A DNA stretch of 64,000 nucleotides. Source: Marsupella aquatica (lineage: Eukaryota > Plantae > Marchantiophyta). The notes under the pieces were generated by a model that saw only the letters and a program-made list of their open reading frames with translations, made no database searches and was not told the DNA's origin. Positions 761 through 53,215 of the stretch are shown one piece after another. Each line of letters opens with the position of its first letter. Positions within the stretch are counted from its first letter, which is position 1. Position numbers and translations under genes: made by a program. Where the stretch lies: NCBI GenBank assembly GCA_973895155.1, contig OZ316899.1, positions 581,573 to 645,572 of the forward strand, given 5' to 3'.

Positions 761-775
761 TAGCTCCCCACTTAA
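761..775 (-). promoter_or_regulatory. Polypurine tract (PPT) of element A, TTAAGTGGGGAGCTA
   Basis: Purine-rich tract directly upstream of the LTR TG; identical 15-mer at 11169..11183 in element B. Confidence 0.9.
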
Positions 776-800
776 TTGTGAAGCGTCCTCGCGAACAACT

Positions 801-1784
801 TCATCTTCGTCCATATAGTATTTCTTTGAGGCGGTCATAATGGATGTGAACTGGATACACCTCTCCCGTAATGTTGGCCAATTGTACGGATCCATTGGAG
901 AACTTCATGGTTACTCTAAAGGGTCCTAACCAGTGAGTGTAAAGCTTTCCTGGAAACCTACTATACCTACTGTCATAAAGTAGCACAAGATCACCGGTGT
1001 GAATACTAACTACTTTCAACTTTTTATCATACTGCTGCTTCATGATATTCTGTCTATATTCTACTCTCTCGGCTGAAATCATTCTCGCCTCCTCTAAAGC
1101 TTCTAACCTATATTCTCGCTCCTTTAGGCTCTCCTCCGCTGAGGCTCTTTCCTCAATTGTAACTTGAAATGTCGGTATCTCAAGTTGCATGGGTACCAGG
1201 GCTTCTTGTCCAAAGGTTAAGAAGAAGGGTGTATGACCGGTAGTGGATTTATAGGCTAGATTGTAAGCAAAAATAGCAGCAAACAATTTATCATCCCAAT
1301 CGAGTTTGTTCTGAGCTACTGTCTTGTTCAATATCTTTCCTATAATTCCGTTTGCTCGTTCTGTCAACCCATTTGCCTTTGGGTGGTAGGGAGTAGTAGG
1401 CCTATGCCTAACTAAATACTGCTCATTTAAACGACTAATTATATCATTCAGAAAATGGGTTCCTCTATCACTAACTAATTCTAGGGGTGCTCCATACCTG
1501 GTGAAGATCTGCTCATACATGAATCTAGCCGTAGTAATTGCATCATCCTTCGTTGTCGGTCTGGCCTCTACCCATTTAGTTGCATAATCCGTAGCCAGGA
1601 TTATGTACTTGTTCCGTCGAGGGTGGGTCAGTGGTTTCAGAGGTCCGATGTAATCAATACCCCACTTCTCGAATGGTGCCAGAGGTAGAATAGGGTGTAG
1701 TGGATGTCTGGTGGACGCCCTTGGTCCTCCCGCTCGTTGACAAGGATCGCATTGTTTGATAAATTGATAGACATCCTTGTGCAA
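801..1784 (-). pseudogene. Element A integrase (frameshifted from RT-RH ORF)
   Basis: CDPCQR zinc-finger half, WGIDYIGP (D), SDRGTHF (D), NGLTERANG (E), C-terminal WLGPF; frameshift near 1800 breaks the expected KIL-AGYWWPTL motif. Confidence 0.92.
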
Positions 1785-4017
1785 GGTGGGCCACCAATAA
1801 CCGGCATTTTAATATCTTCTTAGACATGGTTACTGGGGCAAAATGTCCTCCGGCCTCTTCTCCATGCATGGCCCGTAGGACTCGTTTTACCTCTCCCTTT
1901 TCCAAACACCTTTGAATCATGCCGTTGATTCCATGCTTGTGCAGTATGCCTTTAATGCACTGATACTGTCCGACCTTCCGCACAAAGACTGCGGCTTGCT
2001 CTCGGCTTAATCCTGGCTGTAATCTGGAAGTGCTGAGAAAATGTAAAATCTCAGGGTACCATGTATCAGCTATTTCCACAACGAATAGCTCCTCGTTGGG
2101 GAATCGATCATCGATGCAATCCGTGGCAGGTTCACCTATGATCCTTGAAAAGAAGTCGGCATTGGCGTGTAACTTTCCCGGCTTGATCCTCAGCTCATAG
2201 TCAAACTCCTGTAATAGCAAAATCCATCTTGCTACTCTGCCTGTAAGGTCCGGCTTATTGACTAGGTACTTCAAACTTTCATGATCGGTATGAAAGATTA
2301 CCTTGTACCCTAGTAAATAATGCCTAAACTTTTTACAAGAATAAATGACTCCTAATGCTTCTCTCTCTGTGGTGGAGTAGTTCCGTTCGGCATCGGCAAG
2401 CTGACGGCTTGCGAAGTATATGGGATGGTCCCTTCCTTTCTCATCCAACTGACTTAGTACTGAGCCAATACAGAAGCCCGAGACATCTACAAAAACATGA
2501 AAATCTTTGTTCCAGTCCGGTGCTATCATGACTGGGGCCTCTACTAACATCTGTTTCAGTTCTACCACCGTTGTGACTCGTTCGGGTGTGGGTTCGAAGT
2601 CTGCTCCTGTCTTGAGCATGTTGGTTAATGGTAAAGCTAGCTTGGCAAAATCCTTGATGAACCGGCGATAGTAACCAATGCATCCCAAGAAGGATCTTAC
2701 ATCCTTTATGTTCTTAGGTTGCATGATATCTAGCCATACTGCTAGCTTACCTTTGTCAATCTCAATGCCCTTCCTTGATACCTTGTGACCTAGTAGCACC
2801 CCCTCGGTTACTACAAAGAAACATTTATGTGGGTGTAACTTGAGACCCACCTCTCTACATCTCATGAAGGTTTTCCTGAGGTATTTAGCATGTTTCGATG
2901 CCTTCCCGAATACTGCAAAGTCATCAATGAAGATTTCCATGAACTTTCTCAAGTAATCATGAAAAATGTTCACCATTAATCGTTGAAACATAGCTAGTGC
3001 GTTGCAGAGTCCAAACGGCATACGATTGAAGACATAGATCCCCCATTCCGTGATGAAGGCCGTCTTGATTTGGTCTTCCTGCCGAATCCTGATTTGGTTA
3101 TAACCAGAGTACCCATCCATGAATGAATATAGTTCATGACTGGCTACCATGTCTAGTACCATATCAGTAAACGGTAAAGGAAAATGGTCTTTTAATGTTG
3201 CTTCATTCAGCTTCCTGTAATCCTGACAAACCCGGATCTTGGGTTTACCATCGGGTCCAGCTTTCTTGGGAACTATCACAATTGGAGACACCCAGTCTGA
3301 ATGTAGGATTGGAGTGATGAATCCAGCTTCCACTAGTTTGTCGATTTCCGTTTTGACCAGCAGGGAATACTTCGGGTTCATCCTTCGAATTGGTTGTCGA
3401 AATGATTTGGCTCCTAACATGAGATCAATTCGATGTTCCCCTAGTGTTGGATCTACTCCCTTTAGATCTTGGTGACTCCATGCAAACACATCCTGAAATT
3501 CAATCAATAAGTCACTGATCTCTTTCTCGAGCTCAGGTGCTAGGTTTCTCCCTAAGTTCAGTTCTCTTCCCTCTCCTAAGTCGAGCTTCCGATATTGCCG
3601 TGCTTGGATCATATTAATCTGCTTCTTCAAATTCGGGTCCAGTTCGGCTTCCAGTCTCTCCAATCTCATACCTCCATAAACTGGAATCTCGGCTGGACTA
3701 GCCGAGTCGGTCCCTTCCTTGGTGTCCATAGATTGTCCCCTTGCCGGTCTATCCGGTTTTGAATTGGTGGTCGGCTCCCCTTCCTGCCTTGGCTCTGGAT
3801 TGTGTCTGAGCATCTCATCCACCTCTTGCTCCTGAGGGTCAGGCCGCTGTGCTCTCCCGGCTTCTAATAGGGCCTCAATTTGTTCTGCCCTCGTAATCGG
3901 CTTGTATGCCGATCCCTTGGTATTTAATTCCTTGCCGATGATCGATGGCGTTGTGAACCCTGCCGGCTCTGCCACAACGCCTGCAGAAAATCCACTGTCC
4001 CTGCTACTGCTCCCCAC
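1654..4017 (-). pseudogene. Element A reverse transcriptase, RNase H and integrase N-terminus
   Basis: WVSPIVIVPKK, DYRKLN, DGYSGYNQI, MPFGLCNA, FIDDFAV; RNase H VDVS...NYSTTEREAL...HTDHESL; GGHF. Confidence 0.95.
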
Positions 4018-6917
4018 TTAGCCGTTTCATCCAATTGGTCTACATCCTTTACTTCCTCCGGAATTGCAGCTAAAAAGGTGGATTCTATTGTAAAGCAGTC
4101 CTCGACCTCTTCGTCTTCTTCTTCTAAGTCACCTTCCATTGGTTCTTGCCATAATCCGCTGGGGGGTACCTCCGGTCCAAAGACACTTTCTTCGGTTAGG
4201 TCAGTGAGGCATTCTAACCAACGTACTTCATCGGCTGACTCCAATCCACTATCGTACCCATCTACTTCCCTTATGCTTTTCCTACGGTCATCCTTAGTGT
4301 CCCAGGATACCGTGATAGAGGGGGTCCCAAAAGTGAACTGCTTTTTACCCCAATCTTCTATTACCTCGGCTAGGTACAGCCATGGCCTACCAATCAATAG
4401 CCGGAATGACGTAGGATTTACCGGCTTCATTACCACATAGTTAATGCTAAAAAAGATACCTCCTATCTCTGTCTTGATGCCGGTTAACACTCCCGTGGGA
4501 ATGACCTGATATCCATTGGCCATGTTCAACACTCTTCCAGTCATCTCCGGTGTTAGACCCCATCCTTTTGCTGTTGAATCAATCATAATACATACCCCTG
4601 ATCCTCCATCGATGGGTACCCGTAGTAATAATTCTCCTTGAATCATTAATGGTAATGCTGGGGCTCCTTGATCTTCTTCTATCATTAGTACGTCGGATCT
4701 GGTTGCTACCTTGGGTAATCTCGGCTTGCCGAGAATAGCCTTCCTTAATTGCTTCCGGAAGTACGGGCTATTTTTCAATAGTTGACCTACTGTTGCCGAG
4801 ACTCTAGATTCTAGTACATCTTTAGCCAGGTCATAGGGAACAATCGGCTTCTCCTCTGGTGGTGTCTCCGTCTTGGATTCGGCCAGTTTTGCCACGCTAG
4901 TCTCCACAGCTGTTGGGTCCTCCGAAGCAAACAATGCTTTTGCTCGTTTCACATCCTTGGCAATGGCTTCGGTATTCTCCAGGGTTTCTAATTCTCTCAG
5001 TTGTTCCTTAACACTAGCCGTAACAGAGGGGTAGAACAACTTAGGATGATCTCGATTGAAGTCGCTATCTTGTGAAGGATTGGGTTCACTGGTGGGCTCA
5101 TGGCTTACCTGTATTGCCGGAGCCCTCCCTTCTCCTTCCGTTGATGTTGACGAAGAGTCGATCTTTTCCTCCGTAACCTTCCCTTTATTTTTGGCCAGCC
5201 CATCCCACCTTTCCTTCCTTCTTGTAGATCGAGTAGAGACCCGGTAGCAATCATGATCTAAATCCTCTTCTGAGAAGGTTGATAGGGCTTCGGCCTCATC
5301 ATCAGATGGTACGAACTCTGCCTCGACATCCTCTTGCCATCCTAGTTCGATGTGGTTGATTTGAACTCCTCCGGGGGTAGTACCTGGCGGTAAGACCTTG
5401 ACCGGCAAAAGTTTATGATTTGCGGCCAGGCCTGCCAACCAAGTAGGACATTGCCCTAGCATATGACCTTCCTGTCGGCATCCCATACATAGCTGAGCTG
5501 GTTGTCCATCACCCTGTTTGCGTGCATTCGGGCATTCTCTAGCAAAATGGCCAGGTTGACCACAATTATAGCATGCCGCAAATCTTTGCACATTCGGCCT
5601 AGGAGGTACAGACGGGTTCTGAATAATCCGAGGATACATCTCTCCTGGATTGTTCCTTAACCCTGACCACAGGGATGCAGGTCTGTTGGATAGGTCTCGT
5701 GCTCCAGTCTCACTGATGCCGAAAACACTATCAGCGGCATCTCCTAAAAAGTACTCTACTTCTCCCTGACTTGGTCTGATCTCGGCCACATGCCGAACAT
5801 GATTAGTATTAAGCTTAGGACACGCATCTTTATGGTGTCCGGTTTTATAACATAAGGCACACCATACAGAGCTATCCTCCTGTACTACCTTCTTCTTTGG
5901 TTTTACCTCTGCAATTATAGCCTTAAGTTGCTCTGTAAGGGCTACGATGTTATCTGGTGGCTTAGCCTCCAGCTTGACTTTCGTCTTCCCTCTCCTTCTG
6001 CCCTTCCTTTTCCTAGTTTTTTCTTCTTCAGAACTAGAAGATGACTCACTCTTGCTACTTCCACTATCCGAGCTTGAGTTATCACTTCTTGACTTCTTAG
6101 AATGTTTCTTCTTCTTATCTTTTTTCTTATGGGGTGATCCCTCCTCTGATGAGGAACTCTCAGACTTAAGCTGTTTCTTCCGGCTTGTGATATCTACATT
6201 AATGTATAATTGAATATCCTTAATTGCTTCGGCTAAAGTCTACGGGTTCTCCTTCCTAATTGCAAAACTCATCTTCTGTGGCAAAGCATTCACCAACCAT
6301 TGAAGTTGCATACCTTCAGATGCATTGGTCTTTGTACGTCTTACCAGTTTCTGAAAGCGTTGCAAGAACTTCCTGAAGGATTTGTTCTCCTTGAACCAAA
6401 GTCGTCCCAACTTCAGCACTGCTAGTTCTGAAGTTCCAATAGGTCGAAACTCCTTAACAAAGAGTGTTTTGAAGATATCCCAGATGGCTTGATCTTCCAC
6501 ATCTAATGCTCTGTACCAAGGCCTAGCCTCACCCTTGAATAGGCCGGGAAGAATCTGCATCTTGATGGCCGATTCTCCATTTGCTGCAGCGGTTCCCTCG
6601 AAATCATCCAACCATTCGTCCGGATCCTCATCTCCTCTCCCATGAAATGCCTTGTAATGTATGCGCGACCGTTGGCTCAGTCTGGTCCCTGGCCTCTCGT
6701 CTGGTCGTGCCTCTGGTTCCCCCATGTCGGTTGGAGACTCACTTCTCCTTACCGACTCTTCTTCTGGTATGTCTTCTTCGACGCCACTTCCAGTTTCGGA
6801 GCTACTAGCTCTTTCTGCCCCTCTCAGTCGCTGTGTATCATGCCACACTGCGAGCTGCTACAGTCGAGCTCTCTCCCGTTGAATCACTCTTTCTTCCCTC
6901 GGCGTAAGATCAGTCAT
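3924..6917 (-). pseudogene. Element A gag and aspartic protease with premature stops
   Basis: ATG at 6917 (MTDLTPREER, TAG stop soon after); gag FHGRGDEDPDEWL...QWLVNALP; CCHC knuckles CYNCGQPGHFAREC and CMGCRQEGHMLGQC; protease PIDGGSG...LLIGRPWL; in-frame stop at 6240. Confidence 0.9.
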
Positions 6918-6964
6918 TACCTACGCTTCCTTTCTAACTTCATATCTCACGGCTTAAGAAATGC

Positions 6965-6982
6965 CCCCTCCATCTAGCGCCA
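6965..6982 (-). promoter_or_regulatory. Primer-binding site of element A, TGGCGCTAGATGGAGGGG (tRNA-Asn-like)
   Basis: 4 nt from the LTR end. The complement CCCCTCCATCTAGCGCCA differs by one base from the plant tRNA-Asn 3' end as I recall it (CCCCTCCTTCTAGCG-CCA). Confidence 0.8.
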
Positions 6983-6986
6983 AAAA

Positions 6987-7330
6987 TGTGGTGCGTCCCA
7001 TGGCTCCCTAAACCCAAGAAACCCCCCAGCTCAAGCCGATTCCCGCAGGTTTCGCGCTTGGCGAGGCCATTTCCGCGGCTTAGCGGCATGAGACGCTACT
7101 AACCTTCTACTATTACTATTAACATTTTACACACATATACTGGACAGATCCTTCATCGGGTCATGAGATACGTAGCCGGCCTAATCTAGGCCTTCCCTCG
7201 TCTTCCCCTCCGTCTTGTTAGGTATGTTTGGATTCCGCCGCCGGAATGATCCCCAATAGGTTTGGTTAAGCCGCTAAGACCTCTCTCAGCTCGACACATC
7301 CAACTCTCACTCCCCTGCTTACTTTCCTTC
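6987..7330 (-). repeat. 5' LTR of element A, distal 344-bp piece (split by element B)
   Basis: Begins TGTGGTGC, the inverted match to TGTGATGC; ends in the TSD CCTTC (7326..7330). Confidence 0.9.
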
Positions 7331-10300
7331 TGTCGCACCCCTACCCTGGGCCTTAAATCCGGGTTAGTGTCGTGGTGCGACCTCGACCACCAGTAGGGGA
7401 GAGGGTTCGGGCAAGGAGGTGTGTAGTGACCTTCAATAGCCCTAAGTCGGGCTAAGCCGCTATACTTACTGGTATAACACTCGCATAATTCGTACTTGTC
7501 ATAGGTATATTTATTTTCCACCGCTGGAATTTTCCCTCAGTTAGTGACGCGGACTAACTCCCGACTTGGGGCTTTTCAAGCCATCGACGTGACAGGACCT
7601 TGTGACATGCAATGAGTGGCAATCCCTACCATTAGTCCGCACCCGGTACGTCCCTTAAAATGGCGCCTTTGCCCGGACAAAGCATACACACAACACCAGT
7701 TACTCTCAGAAACATTAAGGGGAAAAGACTACATTTACTCAGCGAAGCATCAGTTTACATGGTTGACTCGACTTCAAAGGGGGTCAGCAGGCCCAACGGT
7801 AGTCGATGCCCAGTCTCTACGAGGCCCTGCCTCGCACTTGTCCAGCAAGCTCGACTCTGGCTCTCACTCCTTGGTACGCTCTGACCCTACTCAGGCCGGG
7901 ACTCCCCGTGCCTCGCCTTTCTTCTGCTGAGATAACTAAGCCTTCTCCCCCTTCCCATTGCGGAAGGGGAAGCCTAAATACTACCATAGCGGAAGAGAAC
8001 CGGAGGATACTACCTTCCGGGGTACTACCTACTGACTAACTAACTGCTGACTACCGGTCGCGCTGCACTGACCGGTTGACCGTCGACTACGAGTGTGCCA
8101 ACCGGAATGGCAGCGGCCAAGCCTACTGACAAACTCTAGTCCGTTGATGGACTCAATCCTACGTTGGCTGATCCTAACTGACCGGCCCTAATTCTTCCTA
8201 CTGCCGCTAATCGGCGCCTAATGACAGTCATTCTGTCGTTACGCCTAACTAAAAGATGCCGCTGACTTAACCGCCTCGCGCGGCGCCTGCTTCTACCCTT
8301 CGCTAACTACCCCTTACGTGTGTGCAGTGGTTGGACCAGGGCTGGTCCCCTTGTCGGGGCGAGACCTCGAGCCGCCTTGATCAGAGGTGGGCCCAGGTTT
8401 TCCCCGCTGGAGGACGAGCAGGGTGACGCGGTCCTGCAAAGCCTTGTTGTCCCGTAATGCTTCCTCCGCCTCGTTTGCAGCTTCGTCGGCTTCAGTCTGG
8501 AGCCGCGCCACCTCCAAGTTGAGCTGGTCGATGGCGTCGCGATGGACCTGGTCCTGCGCTAGCAATTTATCTTGTTCGGCAGAGAGACTAGCCACCTGCT
8601 GTGCTGCCTGCAGGAATTGTTTGTTGAGGTCGGTCAGGCTGGTAACCCGAGCCGAAGATTCTGAGCGTAATTGAAGCACGGTGTCGTCCAGCTTCTTGAG
8701 TTCGGCCTGCGCTCCGCTTAACTCCTGGGTTAGTCCGTCCCTCTGTTCGACAGTGTGGACTAAATCCTCGCGGCGGGTCGTTGCCTCCTCCTCGAGGTGC
8801 TCTACCAGCATCTGGAGACGCCCGATCTCATTCCCCTTCGCCATGAGTTCTTCTTCCAAGCGGCTGACGATCCGTGGTTGGTGCTCTAACATGAAGAAGG
8901 CTGGCTGAAAGTACGCCGAGACTTGTTGTCCGATGTATGTCGCCAACTCCCCAGACATAGTCTGGCTAAACTTCTGGACCAGGTCGTAGGCCATGGTCCC
9001 CGAGGCTACTTGGTAGTCCTCCATCCTCTCGGGTACCGGTGGTTCCTCGGCAGGGGCAATGAGCTCCTCCGTAGTCAGCGCTGGGGAGGGGAAGGTTTCT
9101 TCAGGTGGTGGAGGGATTGGGGGTGGTTGTACTGCAGGTAGCGGAGGCTCAACGGAAGGAGGCGGTGGAATTTCCACAGGGGGCGGTTGCGGAGTATTAG
9201 TCGGGGCTTCCGGCTCGGGGTTTGTCCGAGGGACAGTAGTCCGCGTAGTCGGGGTTGCCTCCTCTGGGGCGGGGGTGACATTACCCGGGGCTGAGGTGGC
9301 CGTATTCTTTCCTCTGGCCTCCCGCCGTGCCTTGTACCAGGCGAGGATAATGGCGATATGACTCCCCAAGTAAGTCTTCCCTCCAATAGCCATACCACCC
9401 TGAGCCCGCTTCAGCTCCCCCGAGAATCTTCGGTAGAAGAATTGGGCCCAGTTTCGTCGTTTGTACTGTTCCACCTGCACTATCGTGCAGAGGGAAATCT
9501 CGGATCGTGGCTCAATCATGTGTAGGGTAGTCCGTATGAAGTTAAGCCGCTCCATACAGGTTAAGTTGGTGCACGCCCCCTGCTTGTATCCGTTGTCCGT
9601 CTTACCCTCGGGTTTGAAGTGCCGCGGCGTATACTCCTTATCCCGAATTCAGATTTCCACCGGCACCGGCCCGATTGGTAGGCCAAAAATTTGCGTTAAC
9701 CGATGCTCCGTGAGTGATAAGGTCTGCCCCGAAACCTTGGTGGTTGACGCATCAGTGTCGAAATTGGAGATGAACTCACAAATCTCCTTCGGCCCGGCGG
9801 CGCACGGCCTCCATAGTAAGTGGGCGAACCGCTCCAACTGATGCTCCTTGAGATAGTCCGCATGTTCGAGTTTCTTGATCGCGATCCAGACTACCTCGGG
9901 GACGCGGATTACCTGTAATAAGTTGGACTTTGGGTTATCTGGGGGCCGTCGGGTCTGGTTGGTCGGGGGGTTTGCCGGGGCAGGTGCAGGCGTGGCGTCG
10001 GTCCGTGTTGATTCGGGGGCCGTCGTAGTCCTTGACCGCTTACGAGGACGCTGTTCGAGTTGCGGACTAGCTCGCTCGGAACCCAAAGAACACTCCGCGT
10101 TGATTACTGGACGGACTTGGGACTGGTTCGGCGGTACTCCGGTGGTCATCGGTTGAGGCGCTGGGGTAGCCATATCCCAGTTGAAGGCGTTGGAGCTTTC
10201 CCCGAGGAACGTGAGATTACGCGCCGCTTCCCGTTGTCTGCTGATGTCTTCTTGGCGCTTTTCGGCTGCGATCTGCTGGTCTAGGTACCCCGGAATCTTG

Positions 10301-11168
10301 TCGAACTCCGCTTGAGTAAGCCGCTGGTTGCCCTTCAGCTTAAAGAACTTAGCTGGAACCTCAAGAATCGCCTCTGCTACCGATCTAAGCCCTTCCTCGC
10401 TGAGATATAGTTCGGTGATGTAGTCTCGCAGCTCGTTATAGCTAGAATCCCTGGTGATGGCTGTCCTTTCGCAATTAACCAGTGCTACCTTAGTTACCAG
10501 CTTTGCGTACCTTTGTTCGTAAGCGGCTTTCTCGGGGCAAGAGTACCAGTAAGTCTCGGAGAACTTAGCACCTACCTCGCCAAACAAGGTCCAAAATCCC
10601 AAGGCTGTGAGGGTCATACTAACCTCGTAGTCCGGTTTGTTGCGTCCACGTTCCCACCTGGCTGGTCCTTTTTTGCGGAGGCCTCGCTCGTCCTGACTAA
10701 ATCTCGCCACATTCCGCTCTTCTCCCTCGATAATTTCCTCGTAAAGGTCGACTGGATTCAATCAAAAAGGCGAGCGGATGGCAGCGTCCGTGAATTCCAA
10801 AAAGGTAAACGTGAGCGAATGGCCCGCAGTGCCATCGGCTCCTCTCTTATGGGGGTGCCCGGACGAGCCCGAGCGTGAGAAGGTCAGGCCGTTTGGTCAT
10901 TGATAACGAGCTGAAGTCGGCGTCTCGGTCCAAGCGTGATTCTTCTAACTGATTTTTACTCCGCTGCCGCCACCGTACCTCGGTCGTGCGTAATAATCCC
11001 TTTCCTGAACTCGTAATTATTTGGTTATCTTAACCTACTCCTAATCTAATCATAATGGCAACTTGACGGCTATACGTGCTATTCTACGCTATGGCTACGG
11101 TCCTAATGACCGTATAAGTCCTAATCTACGACCTGGGTTCGGTCAAGTGACACGTTACCCGTGTCACA
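7331..11168 (-). repeat. 3' LTR of element B (3838 bp)
   Basis: Near-identical to 17193..21030 (about 17 substitutions by manual count); AATAAA on the minus strand near 7510. Confidence 0.97.
8314..10761 (-). CDS. LTR-encoded protein of element B (one frame, single TGA at 9649..9651): conserved FGLP/NG-C/NWA domain, Pro-rich linker, coiled coil
   Basis: ORFs 9649..10761 and 8314..9555 are in the same frame; the codons between them are open apart from that TGA (VEI*IRDKEYTPRHFKPEGKTDNGYKQGACTNLTCMERL). Confidence 0.8.
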
Positions 11169-14100
11169 TAGCTCCCCACTTAAGTGTGAAGCGTCCTCGC
11201 GAACATCATTACGCTCGTTGTCCTGATGAAAGTACCTCTTCACACGATCGTAACTAACTCGATTGGGAAAGAGGTCGCCAGCGTACGTTGATAGTTGTAG
11301 GGATCCGTTCAGGTACATCTGCTGGACAACGAAAGGTCCTAGCCAGCGTGTGTGTAACTTTCCTGGAAAGTACATGTACCTACTGTCGTACAGAAGGACA
11401 AGATCTCCCGCAGTGATGTCCACCTGGCGCAGTCCCTTGTCGTGCTGTTTCTTCGTTGCTTCTTGCTTAGCTGCCACGCGTTGCGATGCCCACAATCTGT
11501 GTTCTTCTAGACTGTCGATCTTATATGCTCGATCGGACAAACTAGCGGCCTCCGATAGTCTGTGGCGGATGCGCACCCGGGGGGTCTCGACCTCGAACTC
11601 GACGGGTACTAGCGCATGTTGTCCGAATACCAAGAAATACGGACTATGGTTTGTAGTGGTCTTGAACGCCAAGTTGTACGAATAGACCGCCGCGAAAAGC
11701 TTGTCGTCCCAGTCTGTTTTGTGGGCTGCCACGGTTTTGTTGAGGATTTTCCCTACAATGCCATTAGCCCGCTCTGCTAGTCCGTTACATTTGGGATGAT
11801 AAGGAGTAGTCTTCCTGTGCTTGACGAGGTAACGGTCAGTCAGTTTTTCCACCGTTTCGTTCAAAAAATGAGTCCCGCAGTCGTTGACTAATTCCAAGGG
11901 AGGTCCGAAGCGGGTGAAGATCTGTTCGTACAGGAACCTGGCAGTGGTGGCCGCGTCATCCTTAACCGTTGCCCGGGCCTCGACCCATTGAGTCGAGTAG
12001 TCGATAGCCAGAAGGATGTACCGGCAACGCCGACCTCGGGTTACCGGAGTGAATGGTCCGATATAATCGATGCCCCATTTCTCAAACGGGGCAAGGGGAA
12101 AGATTGGAGTTAGAGGATGATTACCCGATCTGTGAGGTTTGCCTGCGCGCTGACATAAGTCACACCCTCGGATAAAATGGGCTACGTCGTGATGAAGCGT
12201 GGGCCACCAATAACCTGCGTCCAAGATTTTGTGAGCCATGGTGAAGTGTCCTCCTGCCTCTTCCTCGTGCATAGCTCGCATGACAATGATCGTCTCGTTA
12301 TAGTCTAGGCATCTGCGGATTTTCCCATCGACGCCTTCCTTATGCAGATGTCCGCGGATCATCATGTATGGTGCGGCCTTGCGGAGAAAGACCGACGCGG
12401 CCTCTTGGTTTATGTTACTTGGAATGCGGGCCATTAAGAGGAAGGTGATTAGGTCCCCATACCATGTTGGTTGGTCCGTTTCTACGCGGAATAATTCCTC
12501 ATCCGGGAATGCATCATCGACAGGTGCGTCGTCCGACTCCCCTTCGATCCTTGAGAAGAAGTCCGCATTTACGTGAGCTTTCCCTGGTCGCACCCTGACT
12601 TCGTAGTTAAATTCTTGGAGCAGCAGGACCCAACGGGCTATTCTCCCTGTTAAGTCTGCTTTGTTTACCATGTACTTCAGGCTGTCATGGTCAGTATGGA
12701 ATACTACCTTATACCCCAATAGATAATGGCGAAACTTTTTACACGAGTAGATGATTCCCAAGGCCTCCCGATCGGTGGGCGAATAGTTTTTCTCTGCGGC
12801 AAACAGTTGTCGACTCGCGAAGTAAATGGGGTGGTCACGTTTTTCGTCGTCCAATTGGCTTAGGACTGAGCCGATGCAGAACCCAGACACGTCGAGATAC
12901 ACTTGGAACTCCTTGTTCCAATCGGGGGTAGTCAGAATTGGAGCCATCGTGAGCTGGTTTTTTAGTTCGTCAAAGGCTGATTTTCGACGGGGAGTCATTT
13001 CTATGACCGCGTCTTGCTTCATCATTTCCGTAAGGGGTAGGGCTATCTTAGCAAAATCCTGAATGAATCATCGGTAGTATCCTACGCAACCTAAGAAGGA
13101 TCGCACCGCCTTCTGGTCTGCTGGGTAAGGGACGTTCATCCATGCGGCCACCTTCTCCTGGTCCACCTCGATCCCCCGTTTGGACACTCGGTGTCCAAGT
13201 AGCACTCCTTCCGTTACCCCGAAGAAGCATTTGCTCGGGTGTAATTTCAACCCTACTTCCCGGCACCGCTCCAAAGTCCGCCTCAGATGTTCTGGGTGCT
13301 GGGCGATTGTTCCGAAGATGGCAAAATCGTCTATGAACACCTCCAAAAATTCTCGTAAGAAGTCATGAAAAATATTCATAATGATTCGCTGGAACATAGC
13401 CGGGGCATTGCATAAGCCAAAGGGCATCCGCCTGAACGCGTAGGTTCCCCACTCGGTTATGAACGTGGTTTTGAGCTGGTCCGATAGTCTGATCCAAATC
13501 TGGTTATAACCTGAATATCCATCTAGGAACGTGTACACCTCATTTCGGGCTACCATGTCAAGGACCATATCCGTGTAAGGTAGCGGGTAATGGTCTTTCC
13601 GAGTAGCGTCGTTGAGCTTCCGATAGTCTTGGCATATTCGAATTTTAGGTTTTCCATCAGGCCCTACCTTCTTAGGAACCACCACAATGGGGGACACCCA
13701 TTCGCTAGATAAGACGGGGTAGATGATGTCCGCCACGATCAGTTGATCCAACTCCTCCTTTACCAAGACGGAATGTCTTGGGTTTAGTCTTCGTTGCCTT
13801 TCTCGGACGGCATGAGCACCCAAGTTTAGATCGATGACGTGTTCGCCATAGGCCGGTGAAATCCCGGTTAAGTCTCGGTGACTCCATGCGAAGACGTCCT
13901 CATATTCCGATAGGAGTTCTTGGATGGCCTTTTCCTCTGGCGCTCGTAGGCCATAACCGACGTTGAATGTTCTCTCCCTCTTGGTGGTGTACCTGCCATA
14001 GGATTCCTTGCGGATTACCTCCACATGGTCTCTGGTGGCCCGGTCAAGGTGAGCTTCCAATTCCTCTAGTCTGGTGCCATCGTAGGCCACAGGTTCCCAA

Positions 14101-17078
14101 ACTGTCGGCTGGTCCTTTGGGAGTTCCTTGGGTTCCTTTATTACGGACGGAATCTCGGGGCTCCAGGTAACCTTTTTCTTTGCGGGAGGAGTGACGCTCT
14201 GAGTAGCGTTTTCCTCGGGTATACCGGGTAAGGCCAGCCGGCCAACTGCCTTCGTAGGACTCACCCTGTCGGGGAATGCTCCGCCCGTTGCCGCATCATC
14301 TCCTTCTGGTTTCCTGGGTGCTTCGATTTGGGCCGCTGGTCTCGGCTGGTTCAGAATATGGGCTTCTCGGACGGCATTTACCCCGAAGACTTCTTCTTCT
14401 GAGATGTCCTCCTCCGAGTCATATTCTTCGGGTCCCTGGGGCGTCTCGCCCTGGTAGTCTTCTTCCTTCCAGGACACCGTCGTAGTCGGGTTACCGAATC
14501 GTAATTCCTTCCTTCCCCAGTCGGTAACGACTCGGGCACCGTATAACCAGGGTCTACCCAGCAGTACTGGATAAGAAGAGGGTCAGACGGGTCGCATCAC
14601 CAGGTAATTTAGAAAGAACTCGAGGCCTCCAATCCACGTGGATATCTTGGTTAACGTCCCCAGTGGCATGATCCTGGCGCCGTTTGCTAACCGAATGGCG
14701 CGCGCCGTGGGTTGATAAGATGTATATCCCAACCTTACGGAAGTGTCCTCTATCATGATGTTTACACCGGACCCGCCGTCTATCGGTACAAACCGAACAG
14801 TACAGCCCGCTATCTCGATAGAGACTTCCGGCGCTCCTAAGTCCTGGTAAATCATCATACAGTCGGCTAAGGTGCTTACCCGAGGTAGCCGTCGCCTCCT
14901 CTTTCCTATCAGCATCTCCTTGAGTTGTTGCCTATACTTCGGGTTATCTTGCAATAGTTGTCCGACAGTGGCTGTGGCTGCACAGTTCTGAACATCCTTT
15001 TTGATGTCGTATTGGTTAGACGGTGGGGTCGCAGATTTTACTGCTTCTGCTCCCTTGACTTCAGTTTGCAAGGCAATCTCAGCTTCCTCGGCTTCTTCGG
15101 CCGCCTTAGCATTGGCAATATCCTTCTTAATGGCTTTCTCGTGCTCTTGGGCTTCGTAGGCTTCCAATTGCTTTTTGACCAGTTCCTCTACTCGTGGGTA
15201 GAATAACTTCGGGTTATCCCGCTGGTAGTCTTCCAGCTCGTCTGGTTCCATTGGACTATTCTTATCTGCGACCGCCTCTTTCTGCTGGGCATCCTTCCGA
15301 TCTCGTTCTTTGTACTTATCCTTCTTGCGGGATGATCGGGTAGAAACGCGATAGCACTCGTCGTCCGCGTGCGTTCCCATTTGCTCGACTGCCTCTATGA
15401 GATCGATCCATTCGGTGGAGTCGTCCTGCCATTCCATTGTTACCATTTGTACTACTGCATCCGTAATTGGTGGGGCCGCAGGTTGAGCAGCTCTGACGGC
15501 GCCGGCCTTCGCGGCTAGCACCAAGGGGCAGTTTAACGTGGAATGTGCTTCGGTTCGACAGACCTGGCACAATGGAAGCGCTCTCCCATCCCCTTGCTTC
15601 CTTTGCTCCGTGCACTCTCGGGCAAAGTGACCAGGTTTCTCGCAATTATAGCAAACCGGGGTCCGCCAAACTCCGGGTTTAGGTGGGATACTTGGATTGC
15701 TGACCATCTGGGGGCCACGCCCATTTACCGGATACGGATAAGGGGTATGGAACCCTGGATTGTGGCCGCTTAGGGTGCGAGGTCCCGTCATACTCATCTG
15801 GAACACCGCCTCACCTGGATCCTCGAAGAAGTACTCCATCGTGCATCCCTCTGGCTCGGACTGTCCGGGCTCCAACTCCATCTGGTGCACGCGAGTGTTC
15901 CATCTTGGACATTCTTGCACCACATGTCCCGACTGATAACACTTGGAGCACCAAGCATGCGCTCGGATTTCCGGTGGTTTCTTCTTGTCCGGAGGTTTTT
16001 CCGCCAAGTGCACCGATAGTGCCTTCAGCCGGTCTATGATTTCGTTCAGCTTTTCTACCTCCGCAGCCTTTGGGTCCGTGGTGACGACTTTGGCTCGCGG
16101 TTTATGTTTACCCGTATCTGACCGTGATCCCTTCTTTCTTCTGTGGTCTCGAGACTCTGACTCGGTCTCGCTGGAGGATGAGCCAGTTGACGTCGGGCTA
16201 TTGGACAGGGAATCACTAGACTCTGAATCAGAGTCTGACGAAGAGCTGGTCCGGCCCTTCTTCTTATGTCTTCGTTTCTTCTTCCTCTTCTTCTCGTCGT
16301 ACTCAGAGTCGGAGTCGCTGAAGGTATGATACCTCCTGCTCTTCTTATGTTTGGTCCTCCTATTAAGCTGAGAGGCGTAGTGCGATTCCCTGAAGGATTC
16401 GGCACTATCAATTGCTTGTTGTAGAGTGGTGGTCTTCTTTTCTAGCACCGAGAACGCCATCCTCTGGGGTAGCGCGTTGACGAACCATTTCCTCAGCAGA
16501 GAGTCATCTGGCTTAGGCCGAATCTTGGCGGCAACCTTCTGGAACCGCTGCAGAAATTTGCGAAGTGAGTCATGCTTACCCATTTGCATTCGCCCGATTT
16601 TTTACAGGGCCCGAGATTCGATCCCGACGGGCCGAAATTCTTGCAAGAACGCCGTTTGGAATTGGCCCCATGTACAACCCGGGGGTTGTAAGTTATACCA
16701 CGGGCGCGCTTCTCCTCATAGTACGCCTGGAAGAATGGTTAGCTTAATGGCTTCCTCACCATTCGCCTTGGCCGTGGCCTTGAACTCAGCTATCCATTCA
16801 TCAGGGTCGTCTGTGGGTCGTCCCTTAAAGGGTCGATAGTGAAACCGGGATCGCTGCGACACGTTCTGAGCCACAGGGGGCCGCAACGCACCTGGTACCT
16901 GCGGGGCTGGTGGAACCGGTGGAGTTCCTCCCGCGATCGGTGCTTGGGTACCCATCACAACACGCGATCCTGCTTGGGAAGCCGAGCTCCCCGCTTCGCC
17001 GGTCGCGGTATTCTCTTCCAACCTTGATGCTCCGTCCGGTTGTTGTAAATACGCAGAACGTGACCGGGTAAGGGGCAT
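11121..17078 (-). pseudogene. Element B gag-PR-RT-RH-INT polyprotein with premature stops and a frameshift
   Basis: ORFs 14583..16589, 13068..14477 and 11121..13025 are co-frame. Three CCHC knuckles, PIDGGSG protease, FIDDFA RT, WGIDYIGP/WLGPF integrase. Frameshift near 16720; stops near 16600, at 14583 and at 13068. Confidence 0.95.
11169..11183 (-). promoter_or_regulatory. PPT of element B
   Basis: TTAAGTGGGGAGCTA directly before LTR start TGTGACAC. Confidence 0.9.
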
Positions 17079-17157
17079 GCCCCTTCCTTCACGTTGAGTA
17101 CAAAATCAAAAGTTACTAGCTCACTACACGGCTCCACTCGTAAGGCAAAATGAGTGC

Positions 17158-17175
17158 CCCCTCCATCTAGCGCCA
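17158..17175 (-). promoter_or_regulatory. Primer-binding site of element B (same tRNA-Asn-like 18-mer as A)
   Basis: CCCCTCCATCTAGCGCCA on the plus strand; 17 nt from the LTR end at 17193. Confidence 0.8.
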
Positions 17176-17192
17176 AAAAACCGGTCGCCGTA

Positions 17193-20100
17193 TGTCGCAC
17201 CCCTACCCTGGGCCTTAAATCCGGGTTAGTGTCGTGGTGCGACCTCGACCACCAGTAGGGGTGAGGGTTTGGGCAAGGAGGTGTGTAGTGACCTTCAATA
17301 GCCCTAAGTCGGGCTAAGCCGCTATACTTACTGGTATAACACTCGCATAATTCGTACTTGTCATAGGTATATTTATTTTCCACCGCTGGAATTTTCCCTC
17401 AGTTAGTGACGCGGACTAACTCCCGACTTGGGGCTTTTCAAGCCATCGACGTGACAGGACCTTGTGACATGCAATGAGTGGCAATCCCTACCATTAGTCC
17501 GCACCCGGTACGTCCCTTAAAATGGCGCCTTTGCCCGGACAAAGCATACACACAACACCAGTTACTCTCAGAAACATTAAGGGGAAAAGACTACATTTAC
17601 TCAGCGAAGCATCAGTTTACATGGTTGACTCGACTTCAAAGGGGGTCAGCAGGCCCAACGGCAGTCGATGCCCAGTCTCTACGAGGCCCTGCCTCGCACT
17701 TGCCCAGCAAGCTCGACTCTGGCTCTCACTCCTTGGTATGCTCTGACCCTACTCAGGCCAGGACTCCCCGTGCCTCGCCTTTCTTCTGCTGAGATAACTA
17801 AGCCTTCTCCCCCTTCCCATTGCGGAAGGGGAAGCCTAAATACTACCATAGCGGAAGAGAACCGGAGGATACTACCTTCCGGGGTACTACCTACTGACTA
17901 ACTAACTGCTGACTACCGGTCGCGCTGCACTGACCGGTTGACCGTCGACTACGAGTGTGCCAACCGGAATGGCAGCGGCCAAGCCTACTGACAAACTCTA
18001 GTCCGTTGATGGACTCAATCCTACGTTGGCTGATCCTAACTGACCGGCCCTAATTCTTCCTACTGCCGCTAATCGGCGCCTAATGACAGTCATTCTGTCG
18101 TTACGCCTAACTAAAAGATGCCGCTGACTTAACCGCCTCGCGCGGCGCCTGCTTCTACCCTTCGCTAACTACCCCTTACGTGTGTGCAGTGGTTGGACCA
18201 GGGCTGGTCCCCTTGTCGGGGCGAGACCTCGAGCCGCCTTGATCAGAGGTGGGCCCAGGTTTTCCCCGCTGGAGGACGAGCAGGGTGACGCGGTCCTGCA
18301 AAGCCTTGTTATCCCGTAATGCTTCCTCCGCCTCGTTTGCAGCTTCATCGGCTTCAGTCTGGAGCCGCGCCACCTCCAAGTTGAGCTGGTCGATGGCGTC
18401 GCGGTGGACCTGGTCCTGCGCTAGCAATTTATCTTGTTCGGCAGAGAGACTAGCCACCTGCTGTGCTGCCTGCAGGAATTGTTTGTTGAGGTCGGTCAGG
18501 CTGGTAACCCGAGCCGAAGATTCTGAGCGTAATTGAAGCACGGTGTCGTCCAGCTTCTTGAGTTCGGCCTGCGCTCCGCTTAACTCCTGGGTTAGTCCGT
18601 CCCTCTGTTCGACAGTGTGGACTAAATCCTCGCGGCGGGTCGTTGCCTCCTCCTCGAGGTGCTCTACCAGCATCTGGAGACGCCCGATCTCATTCCCCTT
18701 CGCCATGAGTTCTTCTTCCAAGCGGCTGACGATCCGTGGTTGGTGCTCTAACATGAAGAAGGCTGGCTGAAAGTACGCCGAGACTTGTTGTCCGATGTAT
18801 GTCGCCAACTCCCCAGACATAGTCTGGCTAAACTTCTGGACCAGGTCGTAGGCCATGGTCCCCGAGGCTACTTGGTAGTCCTCCATCCTCTCGGGTACCG
18901 GTGGTTCCTCGGCAGGGGCAATGAGCTCCTCCGTAGTCAGCGCTCGGGAGGGGAAGGTTTCTTCAGGTGGTGGAGGGATTGGGGGTGGTTGTACTGCAGG
19001 TAGCGGAGGCTCAACGGAAGGAGGCGGTGGAATTTCCACAGGGGGCGGTTGCGGAGTATTAGTCGGGGCTTCCAGCTCGGGGTTTGTCCGAGGGACAGTA
19101 GTCCGCGTAGTCGGGGTTGCCTCCTCTGGGGCGGGGGTGACATTACCCGGGGCTGAGGTGGCCGTATTCTTTCCTCTGGCCTCCCGCCGTGCCTTGTACC
19201 AGGCGAGGATAATGGCGATATGACTCCCCAAGTAAGTCTTCCCTCCAATAGCCATACCACCCTGAGCCCGCTTCAGCTCCCCCGAGAATCTTCGGTAGAA
19301 GAATTGGGCCCAGTTTCGTCGTTTGTACTGTTCCACCTGCACTATCGTGCAGAGGGAAATCTCGGATCGTGGCTCAATCATGTGTAGGGTAGTCCGTATG
19401 AAGTTAAGCCGCTCCATACAGGTTAAGTTGGTGCACGCCCCCTGCTTGTATCCGTTGTCCGTCTTACCCTCGGGTTTGAAGTGCCGCGGCGTATACTCCT
19501 TATCCCAAATTCAGATTTCCACCGGCACCGGCCCGGTTGGTAGGCCAAAAATTTGCGTTAACCGATGCTCCGTGAGTGATAAGGTCTGCCCCGAAACCTT
19601 GGTGGTTGACGCATCAGTGTTGAAATTGGAGATGAACTCACAAATCTCCTTCGGCCCGGCGGCGCACGGCCTCCATAGTAAGTGGGCGAACCGCTCCAAC
19701 TGATGCTCCTTGAGATAGTCCGCATGTTCGAGTTTCTTGATCGCGATCCAGACTACCTCGGGGACGCGGATTACCTGTAATAAGTTGGACTTTGGGTTAT
19801 CCGGGGGCCGTCGGGTCTGGTTGGTCGGGGGGTTTGCCGGGGCAGGTGCAGGCGCGGCGTCAGTCCGTGTTGATTCGGGGGCCGTCGTAGTCCTTGACCG
19901 CTTACGAGGACGCTGTTCGAGTTGCGGACTAGCTCGCTCGGAACCCAAAGAACACTCCGCGTTGATTACTGGACGGACTTGGGACTGGTTCGGCGGTACT
20001 CCGGTGGTCATCGGTTGAGGCGCTGGGGTAGCCATATCCCAGTTGAAGGCGTTGGAGCTTTCCCCGAGGAACGTGAGATTACGCGCCGCTTCCCGTTGTC

Positions 20101-21030: not shown

Positions 21031-21035
21031 CCTTC

Positions 21036-30480: not shown

Positions 30481-30681
30481 TAGTATGTTGGACTTAAACA
30501 TGTATATATATTGGATTGTCTTCCCTTTTTTACAATATTGGATTAATGGAAGTGATGGTGATTTTCATTCATGCATGCATGTTATGAGATTGTTGCTAGT
30601 GATATTGTTGTGATGTTGTATGTACATGAATGATAGTCTAACCAATATGTGCAACTTGATATTGGGGTCATTTCATGAGCA

Positions 30682-52728: not shown

Positions 52729-53215
52729 TGCTTTTGGGACCGCTAGAGCTTCAATTTGATACTATTCCTCAGCACCCAGGTTTGCCATAGCTGCGACGAT
52801 AATTTGCGTGCTGCGAAGGTTGCTTTCGAAGGGGAAGAGCAAGTGAATAGGGGTGGTGAAAAGACAGAAGTGAGCGCCTGAACTCTGTGCTTGATCCCTA
52901 TCAAGGCATGAAGTCCCCGTTCCGTTGCTAAGTCCCGTTGCGAAGTTAGCCGTAGTGCCGTAACGTGAACTTTCCTTAAACGCGTAAGGCATAAGCCATA
53001 ATCCTGTATTGGCGTAACTTGAATACCCCATAAACCCGTAAACCCGTAACTTGAATACGCGTAAACGCATAAGCCCGTAATAGAGTACTTGTAACTTTAG
53101 TAAGTCGGAATAAGGTTTACACTTGGCACTTTAACAGCAACAGCAAGCTTAAACACAGTAAAAAGTTTTAAAAATTTCAGTAATTTCAGGTTCTCGGTAT
53201 TACCCACCACTTACA

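What the first reader, a model, noticed from the sequence alone, without database searches (positions are those of the whole stretch)
7331..11168. Protein-coding giant LTRs: a ~816-codon gene is built into the LTR itself
Seen: element B's LTR is fixed by TG...CA ends, a CCTTC TSD, PPT and PBS, and about 2.45 kb of its 3838 bp is one sense-strand reading frame (10761 to 8314), present in both LTRs. Two other, highly diverged LTR families here (A and solo LTR C) carry a homologous ORF in the same position and orientation, sharing L..LPW/E-F/(I)..FGLP/NG...C-T/L.F(L/I)/NWA motifs. Established: Athila/Tat elements carry extra ORFs between pol and the 3' LTR; U3-encoded genes are known mainly from retroviruses (MMTV sag, HIV nef). 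Inference: a clade of plant Gypsy elements carries an accessory gene in U3, doubling it per insertion and leaving it behind in every solo LTR. I know of no description of this, but could not check the literature.
Basis: partly seen in the sequence, partly recalled or inferred. Interest (0 to 1): 0.9.

Follow-up and report, generated by a model that had tools for sequence, protein, structure and literature searches.

The report
Accessory gene inside retrotransposon LTRs
Two nested liverwort-type Ty3/gypsy retrotransposons carry a real, selected protein-coding gene inside their long terminal repeats, because the repeat starts right at the end of pol; I found no earlier description of this layout for plant elements.

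Summary
Element B is a canonical LTR retrotransposon: two 3838-bp LTRs with 17 mismatches, TG..CA ends, a 5-bp target duplication, PPT and PBS. It sits inside the 5' LTR of an older relative, A, whose LTR is about 4676 bp. Both LTR families hold one long sense frame: 816 codons in B with one premature stop shared by both LTR copies, and 1214 codons in A with two stops. Other frames carry 20-66 stops.

The gene is real. A profile of its roughly 200-aa core domain finds 207 relatives. AlphaFold gives pLDDT 93.8. dN/dS is 0.04-0.41. Intact 518-808-aa copies exist elsewhere.

Three Calypogeia fissa elements show the same layout. A conserved PPT block lies in the last codons of pol, the LTR starts immediately after it, and the gene follows inside the LTR.

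A sister lineage (metagenome contig L003) has the homologous gene upstream of that PPT block, so there it is internal. The window's "solo LTR C" probably follows L003.

The LTR-borne state is best read as a shifted PPT boundary around an Athila/Tat-style 3' extra ORF. No Pfam, PDB or viral-fold match was found, and function is unknown. U3 placement is inferred, not mapped.

The parts
7331..21030 (-). Element B, a complete nested Ty3/gypsy LTR retrotransposon (13.7 kb), inserted in the 5' LTR of element A
   Evidence: Self-BLAST gives an LTR pair at 99.56% identity. TG..CA ends and a 5-bp target duplication are present. gag, RT, RNase H and integrase domains lie between the LTRs.
7326..7330 (.). 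Target-site duplication of B (CCTTC on +). The second copy is at 21031-21035.
   Evidence: Junction sequences.
7331..11168 (-). B 3' LTR, 3838 bp
17193..21030 (-). B 5' LTR, 3838 bp, 17 mismatches to the 3' LTR and no indels
8314..10761 (-). LTR-borne accessory gene of B, 3' LTR copy. It is an 816-codon frame broken by one premature stop. The likely start is the conserved ATG at 10617 (LTR position 552) and the stop is at LTR position 2855. Its parts are an N-terminal helical module, a disordered linker, a conserved core domain of about 200 aa, a Pro-rich linker and a coiled coil.
   Evidence: Stop counts by frame. Homologues. AF2 on the N-terminal piece. Coiled-coil Pfam noise only.
18176..20623 (-). 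The same gene in the B 5' LTR, with the same single premature stop
   Evidence: Of 17 LTR differences, 11 lie in the ORF (5 synonymous, 6 non-synonymous), which looks like neutral drift after insertion.
11169..11208 (-). PPT block of B, lying in the last codons of pol and ending in AAGTGGGGAGCTA just before the LTR start TGTGA
   Evidence: The block is 87-91% identical in A, in C. fissa L002 and L009, and in L003.
17144..17179 (-). PBS-like block of B (core TGGCGCTAGATGGAGGGGG), which starts 18 nt after the LTR end
   Evidence: Conserved in A, L002, L006 and L009. The cognate tRNA was not identified.
11121..16589 (-). B gag-pol, a single frame of 1823 codons broken by two in-frame stops. gag has zf-CCHC. 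pol has RT, RNase H, integrase zinc-binding and core domains. No chromodomain hit.
17364..17392 (-). Conserved palindromic block (ATTCCAG..GGAAT followed by an A/T-rich run) about 200 nt before the LTR end. The 3' LTR copy is at 7502-7530 and A's copy at 7219-7247.
   Evidence: It is the only alignable LTR block shared by A, B, L002, L006 and L009, and it occurs once per LTR. It is a candidate promoter/R landmark (inference).
1..760 (-). Element A 3' LTR, first 760 bp only because it runs off the window. It holds the first 215 codons of A's LTR gene (645->1).
   Evidence: 98.55% identical to 24603-25362. tblastn 97.7%.
761..797 (-). PPT block of A at the end of pol
801..5939 (-). Element A gag-pol. 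It is about 60% aa identical to B in RT and INT and 38% in gag. It is split over overlapping frames: a gag/pol overlap plus at least one further frameshift.
6951..6986 (-). PBS-like block of A
6987..7330 (-). Last 344 bp of A's 5' LTR, separated from the rest by the insertion of B
21031..25362 (-). First 4332 bp of A's 5' LTR. The total LTR is about 4676 bp.
21606..25247 (-). LTR-borne accessory gene of A, a 1214-codon frame broken by two premature stops. The likely start is the conserved ATG at 24986. Its parts are the N-module, the core domain and a long coiled coil.
49599..53065 (-). C: a remnant of a third, diverged relative. It is collinear with Logan contig L004, which holds an intact 808-aa ORF. 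The ORF remnant lies at about 50390-52790 and is broken by at least one frameshift and at least three stops. No pol or gag is adjacent.
49582..49615 (-). Polypurine run (49599-49615) followed by TGTG at 49598. This is a putative PPT/LTR start of C lying downstream of the ORF.
   Evidence: inference; L004 ends at this junction.

Best explanation
A and B belong to a liverwort lineage of non-chromovirus Ty3/gypsy retrotransposons. In this lineage the plus-strand primer site (PPT) is embedded in the last codons of pol.

Why the gene is in the LTR. Everything between the PPT and the end of U5 becomes LTR on reverse transcription. Here that stretch contains a 770-1200-codon gene, so the gene is written into both LTRs of every new copy.

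Where the gene sits in the RNA. In the genomic RNA it still lies 3' of pol, in the same place as the 3' sense extra ORFs of Athila/Tat elements. A sister lineage (L003, and probably the window's C) has the homologous gene upstream of the same PPT block, so there it is internal. The LTR-borne state is therefore a change in the order of PPT and gene, not a new kind of gene.

The protein. It is soluble. It has an N-terminal helical module, a conserved helical core domain of about 200 aa with no known relative, a Pro-rich linker and a long coiled coil.

Shown: the LTR limits, the PPT and PBS blocks, coding status, selection, recurrence in a second species, and the alternative arrangement in L003.

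Inferred:
- The gene lies in U3, with the promoter and R in the last roughly 250-1000 nt of the LTR.
- It is expressed from the full-length or a subgenomic/spliced transcript, as env-like ORFs are.
- The protein acts in trans as an oligomeric adaptor in the element's own cycle (about 35%) or as a counter-silencing factor (about 15%).

Trans action is suggested because B was copied with the premature stop already in its template.
For: LTR limits and hallmarks of B. A's LTR and its ORF in both copies.

Coding status:
- 1-2 stops in 816 and 1214 codons, against 20-66 stops in the other frames.
- 207 profile hits at E<=1e-3, 59 of them at E<=1e-10.
- AF2 pLDDT 93.8 and pTM 0.89 for the core domain, and pLDDT about 90 for the N-module starting at the conserved Met.
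- dN/dS 0.26 between two C. fissa copies (493 codons).
- dN/dS 0.08, 0.41, 0.13 and 0.04 for four separate frame segments of C against the intact L004 ORF.

The same layout elsewhere:
- L002, L006 and L009 of Calypogeia fissa have the PPT block at the end of pol.
- Their LTRs are about 4.9-5.1 kb, bounded by the conserved PBS block.
- Intact 518-, 555- and 630-aa ORFs lie inside those LTRs.
- In L009 the ORF start is seen in both LTRs.

Alternative order in L003: pol, then the ORF (708 aa, intact), then the PPT block and TGTGATG.

All five contexts with enough flank are next to gag-pol. Named pol relatives are all liverworts. A single conserved block lies near the LTR 3' end.
Against: - No transcript data, so the U3/R/U5 limits, the promoter and the mode of expression are inferred.
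- Every copy in the window is broken, and B's gag-pol has two stops as well.
- Function is unknown. There is no Pfam, PDB-sequence, PDB-fold or viral-fold match.
- The direction of the PPT/gene rearrangement rests on one outgroup contig from a metagenome.
- Lineage placement (Tat-Z/Athila-like) was not tested by phylogeny.
- Only one named species besides the window's unknown host shows the layout.
- dS is saturated in the C versus L004 comparison.
Confidence: 0.7

Rival explanations
1. The gene lies in R/U5, not U3. Transcription would start in the first 400-550 nt of the LTR. The ORF would then be the first cistron of a very long 5' leader, like the 5' extra ORFs of Ogre or Tekay.
For: There are 376-551 nt of LTR upstream of the conserved Met that could hold a promoter. 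No TSS data exist. 5' extra ORFs are known in other lineages (PMC7264820, PMC11728184).
Against: L003 has the homologous gene between pol and the PPT, at the 3' end of the RNA. A simple PPT shift keeps that RNA order. The only LTR block conserved across families lies about 200 nt before the LTR end, where promoter/R signals usually sit. Minus-strand strong-stop DNA would have to be 3.3-4.3 kb long.
Confidence: 0.13
2. The ORF is a transduced host gene fragment, or a chance open frame in G+C-rich repeat DNA, with no role for the element.
For: The LTR is G+C rich, 0.58 in the ORF region. Gene capture by plant LTR elements is documented (PMC7264820). All window copies are broken.
Against: - Homologous ORFs occupy the same position in families whose pol is only 54-64% identical, and in a second species.
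- dN/dS is 0.04-0.41.
- The fold is confident.
- Every context seen is next to gag-pol.
- The named members, all Calypogeia fissa gene models, carry only the label 'unnamed protein product'.
Confidence: 0.04
3. The repeat limits are misread. The ORF would really be internal and the apparent LTR a segmental or tandem duplication.
For: L006 shows a tandem or recombinant arrangement sharing one LTR. L003 is a collapsed or circular contig. In C the ORF probably is internal.
Against: - For B the two 3838-bp copies end in TG and CA.
- They are flanked by an identical 5-bp duplication.
- They are bounded by the PPT and PBS blocks.
- The PPT block followed directly by TGTGA is conserved in A, B, L002 and L009.
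Confidence: 0.03

Closest known systems
3' sense extra ORFs (eORF-3'F, 'env-like') of Athila/Tat (OTA) Ty3/gypsy elements
   Same: A sense-strand accessory ORF lies directly downstream of pol in the genomic RNA. It is conserved within the lineage but evolves fast. The elements are non-chromovirus with large LTRs. Three of 98 family members give sub-threshold hits to PF20167 (Transposase_32), the domain reported in an Athila 3' aORF (PMC11728184).
   Different: Here the PPT lies upstream of the ORF, so the ORF is part of the LTR and is present twice per element. There is no transmembrane segment. No Pfam family reaches significance. The hosts are liverworts.
PMD-coiled-coil extra ORFs of Tat/Ogre elements (Ustyantsev et al. 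2015, PMC4408406)
   Same: The architecture is 'globular helical domain + coiled coil' in an extra ORF of a Tat-like lineage.
   Different: No PMD (PF10536) hit in any of 98 members. Those eORFs are internal and are 5' sense or 3' antisense. That paper reported no eORFs in early-branching Tat lineages.
U3-encoded accessory genes of retroviruses (the MMTV superantigen gene; nef and bel genes overlapping U3)
   Same: A protein-coding gene lies between the PPT and R, so it is duplicated in both LTRs of the provirus. It is carried at the 3' end of the genomic RNA.
   Different: No sequence or fold relation was found. The ORF is far larger, at 2.3-3.6 kb. The host is a plant. Its expression route is unknown. 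This is an analogy of layout only.
Giant-LTR plant elements (Ogre and other non-chromoviruses, LTRs up to about 5 kb; PMC6317226)
   Same: LTRs of 3.8-5.1 kb in non-chromovirus Ty3/gypsy elements.
   Different: In the sources I could read, the extra ORFs of those elements are described by their position relative to gag-pol or the polyprotein, and none is reported inside an LTR. Here 60-78% of the LTR is one reading frame.
VANC anti-silencing proteins of VANDAL (Mutator-like) transposons
   Same: A transposon-encoded accessory protein acting in trans. VANC21 bound to DNA (9lnj) was the best partial fold match of any biological interest, at TM 0.37.
   Different: The match is far below significance (E 1.8, probability 0.14), and there is no sequence relation. 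It is a lead, not a relationship.

Membership tests
Ty3/gypsy (Metaviridae) LTR retrotransposon | Two LTRs with TG..CA ends and a 4-6 bp target duplication | tested here: met
   B has 3838-bp LTRs at 99.56% identity, TG..CA ends and a CCTTC duplication.
Ty3/gypsy (Metaviridae) LTR retrotransposon | Domain order gag(CCHC) - RT - RNase H - integrase, with the PBS after the 5' LTR and the PPT before the 3' LTR | tested here: met
   Pfam hits in that order in A and B. PPT and PBS blocks are conserved across families. The cognate tRNA was not identified.
Non-chromovirus OTA (Athila/Tat) superclade | No chromodomain at the integrase C-terminus | tested here: met
   No Chromo hit in the 220-aa integrase tail at E<=0.01.
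Non-chromovirus OTA (Athila/Tat) superclade | Placement by RT/RH/INT phylogeny against a reference set such as REXdb. Liverwort Tat-Z clades lack the additional RNase H (PMC10508981). | not tested
   No reference set is at hand. Named pol relatives are liverwort proteins only. No additional RNase H domain was seen.
Pfam PF20167 Transposase_32 / PF03078 ATHILA ORF-1 | hmmscan score above the gathering threshold | tested here: not met
   No hit for the window's ORFs even at E<=10. Three of 98 relatives hit PF20167 below threshold, best E 0.005. PF03078 was never hit.
Pfam PF10536 PMD and PF04195 Transposase_28 | hmmscan score above the gathering threshold | tested here: not met
   No hit in the window's ORFs or in the top 10 relatives scanned singly. 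Neither family appeared among the 25 listed families in either bulk scan of relatives.
env-like proteins of plant retroelements | At least one transmembrane helix or a signal peptide | tested here: not met
   The maximum 19-residue Kyte-Doolittle mean is 0.63-1.18 in the A and B proteins. It is borderline (1.65-1.73) only in two relatives.
U3-encoded gene (layout class, as in MMTV) | The ORF lies downstream of the PPT, inside the LTR, and is present in both LTR copies | tested here: met
   B: both copies are complete. A: the first 215 codons are seen in the second copy. L009: the N-terminus is seen in the second copy.
U3-encoded gene (layout class, as in MMTV) | The ORF lies upstream of the mapped transcription start (the U3/R boundary) | not testable with these tools
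   No transcript data. The only support is a conserved block about 200 nt before the LTR end and the RNA order seen in L003.
Solo LTR (claimed for C) | TG..CA termini flanked by a target duplication, with no internal sequence | tested here: not met
   No matching termini or duplication were found. A PPT-like run followed by TGTG lies downstream of the ORF. The related L003 has the ORF upstream of the PPT.

The most novel reading that the evidence does not exclude
Each LTR, including every solo LTR left by recombination, is a self-contained gene cassette: an upstream promoter in the first 400-550 nt, the ORF, and the LTR's own poly(A) signal. Solo LTRs would then keep supplying a trans-acting factor that serves the whole family, for example a counter-silencing or RNA/particle-handling factor. 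The LTR would act as a vehicle that multiplies gene dosage independently of gag-pol.
Probability: 0.15. Interest if true: 0.85.

Novelty: new variant of a known kind. Interest (0 to 1): 0.62.

Why it matters
LTRs of plant retrotransposons are treated as non-coding regulatory DNA. Surveys of extra ORFs describe them by their position relative to gag-pol (PMC6317226, PMC7264820), and none I could read reports one inside an LTR. An LTR-borne gene may therefore be missed or counted as a host gene. In the Calypogeia fissa annotation the relatives appear only as 'unnamed protein product'.

Earlier work concluded that early-branching Tat-like lineages lack extra ORFs (PMC4408406). These liverwort elements suggest the ORF may simply sit in the LTR, although their lineage still needs a phylogeny.

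The pair of arrangements, gene before the PPT in L003 and after it in A, B and C. fissa, is a natural comparison. It shows how a small shift of one cis-signal moves kilobases of coding DNA into the LTR, doubles its copy number and ties its fate to solo-LTR formation.

The protein also defines an uncharacterised domain family. It has about 200 representatives, a confident fold, and no Pfam, PDB or viral neighbour.

Tried and rejected
- Pfam on all window ORFs, on the top 10 relatives and on 98 family members found only coiled-coil noise and sub-threshold PF20167.
- Word-indexed protein search with A's 444-aa ORF found nothing. With a family alignment it found only C. fissa entries.
- Exact look-up of ten window ORFs found none in the collection.
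- PDB sequence search with two profiles found only coiled-coil matches.
- Foldseek of the core domain against PDB and BFVD, and of the N-module against PDB, gave nothing at E<=0.001. The VANC21 match at TM 0.37 was rejected as evidence.
- I first guessed that the Logan contigs of 3.5-3.9 kb were B-type LTRs. They are C-type.
- A search for termini and a target duplication around C found none.
- A search for pol or gag next to C found none.
- A tRNA scan to identify the primer found no tRNA genes in the window or loci.
- The Riccia element L008 (pol 46-58% identical) has no homologue of the gene. L007 ends at pol and was uninformative.
- DNA of three Logan contigs could not be fetched.
- Steinbauerova et al. 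2011, the main survey of extra ORFs, is not in the held library.
Full report
**What is at the coordinates**

Self-comparison of the window gives one long repeat pair, 7331-11168 and 17193-21030. Each copy is 3838 bp, with 17 mismatches and no indels. Read on the minus strand, each copy starts with TG and ends with CA. The pair is flanked by the same 5 bases (CCTTC on the plus strand). A purine-rich block abuts the 3' copy and a PBS-like block follows the 5' copy.

Between the repeats lie gag (zinc knuckle), reverse transcriptase, RNase H and integrase, in Ty3/gypsy order and without a chromodomain hit. Element B is therefore a canonical LTR retrotransposon. Its gag-pol is one frame of 1823 codons with two in-frame stops.

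B sits inside the 5' LTR of an older relative, A, also on the minus strand. A's 3' LTR runs off the window start: 1-760 matches 24603-25362 at 98.55%. A's 5' LTR is 25362->21031 plus 7330->6987, about 4676 bp. A and B are about 60% identical in RT and integrase and 38% in gag.

**The reading frame**

In B the frame 10761->8314 (816 codons) has one internal stop, and it is the same stop in both LTR copies. The other five frames of the same stretch have 20-49 stops. In A the frame 25247->21606 (1214 codons) has two internal stops, against 25-66 elsewhere.

Because both LTRs of B carry the stop, it was already in the template RNA, or it was spread later by conversion between the LTRs.

Homologues begin at a Met that corresponds to 10617 in B and 24986 in A. 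A confident fold prediction also begins exactly there. The gene then occupies LTR positions 552-2855 of 3838 in B and 377-3757 of 4676 in A. The 17 differences between B's LTRs include 11 in the ORF, 5 synonymous and 6 not. That is what neutral decay after insertion predicts.

**Is it a gene?**

The pieces of the B frame were searched separately and were never joined.

- Within the window, A's ORF matches B's at E 7e-15, and matches a third locus, C (about 52.7-52.1 kb), at E 0.002.
- A profile of that alignment was searched against 1.84 billion representative proteins. It found 207 relatives at E<=1e-3 and 59 at E<=1e-10. Six positions (W, F, G, C, F, W) are invariant or near-invariant.
- AlphaFold2 on C's 237-aa segment with 98 sequences gives mean pLDDT 93.8 and pTM 0.89, a mostly helical domain.
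- B's N-terminal piece gives a second confident helical module (residues 49-190), a disordered linker and the start of the core domain.
- The C-terminal halves of A and B are Pro-rich and then coiled coil. No transmembrane segment is present.
- Nei-Gojobori dN/dS is 0.26 over 493 codons between two Calypogeia fissa copies (dS 0.24).
- For four frame segments of C, each compared on its own with an intact relative, dN/dS is 0.08, 0.41, 0.13 and 0.04. dS is saturated there, so these values are rough.
- Intact relatives of 518, 555, 623, 630, 708 and 808 aa exist.

The frame is a protein-coding gene under purifying selection. It is not a composition artefact.

**Is it really in the LTR, and is this general?**

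The 40 nt before the LTR start are almost the same in A and B. They end in a purine run followed by TGTGA, and they form the last codons of pol.

The same block, 91% identical, ends pol in Calypogeia fissa elements L002 and L009. It is followed at once by the LTR. A 25-nt PBS block is likewise shared by A, B, L002, L006 and L009. These two landmarks bound LTRs of about 4.9-5.1 kb in C. fissa, and those LTRs contain intact homologous ORFs.

L009 is a complete element with 96.5% identical LTRs. A 630-aa ORF lies in the 5' LTR and its beginning is seen again in the 3' LTR. L002 and L006 agree. The layout is thus shared by at least four families in two hosts.

Named relatives of B's pol are all from liverworts: Calypogeia, Riccia and Marchantia. 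The window's host is therefore probably a liverwort. This is an inference.

**The other arrangement**

L003 is a 10.9-kb metagenome contig whose ends overlap by 123 bp. Its pol is 54% identical to A and B, and it carries an intact 708-aa homologue directly after pol. In L003 the conserved PPT block (87% identical to A and B, followed by TGTGATG) lies after the ORF, not before it. There the gene is an ordinary internal 3' extra ORF.

The window's C belongs to this branch. Its domain is 37% identical to L003's and 74% identical to that of Logan contig L004, which carries an intact 808-aa ORF. C is collinear with L004 over 53065->49599. At the exact point where L004 ends, the window has a polypurine run followed by TGTG. 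No pol or gag flanks C, and no termini or target duplication were found.

C is therefore better read as a truncated piece consisting of ORF, PPT and LTR start than as a solo LTR with the ORF inside. I put this at about 65%.

**How it most likely works**

Reverse transcription turns whatever lies between the PPT and the 3' end of R into U3 of both LTRs. With the PPT inside the end of pol, the downstream gene becomes LTR.

The order in the RNA (pol, gene, promoter region, R) is the same as in L003. The difference exists only at the DNA level: a second copy of the gene upstream of the element's promoter, and retention of the gene in any solo LTR.

The only LTR sequence conserved across A, B, L002, L006 and L009, apart from the ends, is a palindromic block plus an A/T-rich run about 200 nt before the LTR end. 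It occurs once per LTR. This fits transcription signals lying downstream of the gene, which would place the gene in U3.

That placement, the route of expression and the protein's role are inferences. B was copied although its gene already carried a stop, which suggests the product can be supplied in trans or is dispensable in cis.

**Comparison with what is known**

Extra ORFs are common in Athila/Tat-type elements. The reviews and surveys I could read place them relative to gag-pol or the polyprotein, and none reports one inside an LTR (PMC7264820, PMC6317226, PMC11963269, PMC11728184, PMC4408406).

- Tat eORFs often encode 'PMD + coiled coil' (PMC4408406). This protein has a similar build, but no PMD, Transposase_28 or ATHILA ORF-1 match was found.
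- PF20167, reported in an Athila 3' aORF (PMC11728184), is hit below threshold by 3 of 98 members. That leaves a remote link possible but untested.
- The layout resembles U3-encoded retroviral genes by analogy only. No sequence or fold relation was found.
- Phrase searches for LTR-encoded ORFs returned retroviral papers and none on plant LTR retrotransposons among those listed.
- The main survey of extra ORFs (Steinbauerova et al. 2011) could not be read. Prior mention therefore cannot be excluded.

**Verdict**

I rate it a new variant of a known kind, interest 0.62.

- Note 1 records the lengths of the two pieces of B's frame.
- The scripts printed frame-segment bounds of the C remnant. Both disclose roughly where the breaks lie.
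- In my reasoning I once wrote from memory a guess at a tRNA 3' end.
- No repaired, joined, consensus or ancestral sequence was built. The consensus lines printed by the alignment tools were not used.

Noticed in passing
window 54496-60141 (+): A Ty1/copia element with 179-bp LTRs (97% identical) and gag, integrase-SH3 and RVT_2 ORFs. It lies just upstream of the C remnant and may have contributed to C's truncation.
   Followed up: partly
window 26000-44200: CACTA/En-Spm transposase pieces on both strands (Transposase_21, DUF4218, DUF4216, Transposase_24). A 292-aa ORF with BRCT domains lies at 41759-42637.
   Followed up: partly
window 17364-17392, 7502-7530, 7219-7247; L002 13446; L006 2941 and 13747; L009 13936: A palindromic block (ATTCCAG..GGAAT) plus an A/T-rich run, once per LTR and about 200 nt before its end. 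It is conserved across families whose LTRs are otherwise unalignable. Its function is unknown; it may be a promoter/R landmark.
   Followed up: partly
window 17144-17192: In B the conserved PBS block begins 18 nt after the LTR end. In A it follows the apparent end almost directly. The tRNA it would pair with was not identified, and no tRNA gene occurs in the window or loci.
   Followed up: partly
window 7331-11168 and 17193-21030: Both LTR copies of B share the same premature stop in the accessory gene, so the copy was probably made from an already defective template. B's gag-pol frame also has two in-frame stops.
   Followed up: yes
L003 1-123 and 10730-10852: The ends of this metagenome contig are identical over 123 bp. 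The contig is one internal region plus one LTR in circular permutation, which could be collapsed LTRs, a tandem array or a one-LTR circle.
   Followed up: no
L006 2492-4202 vs 13304-15008; gag start again at 14613: The ORF-bearing LTR is both the 3' LTR of one element and the 5' LTR of the next. The two flanking elements are only 79% identical, which points to a tandem or recombinant array.
   Followed up: no
L001 5854-12312 and 14524-19082: In a more distant C. fissa element (pol 35-50% identical to B) the homologous 744-aa ORF lies about 4 kb downstream of pol. It is followed by arrays of tandem repeats. The LTR limits were not found.
   Followed up: no
L004 314-2740; window about 50390-51500: C-type proteins replace the coiled coil of A and B with a different C-terminal region. 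That region is under strong constraint (dN/dS 0.04-0.13) and has a borderline hydrophobic segment. It was not modelled.
   Followed up: no
L008 (Riccia sorocarpa): A related element (pol 46-58% identical to B) with only a 440-bp repeat pair detected (98% identical) and no homologue of the accessory gene. The gene is therefore not universal in liverwort relatives.
   Followed up: partly
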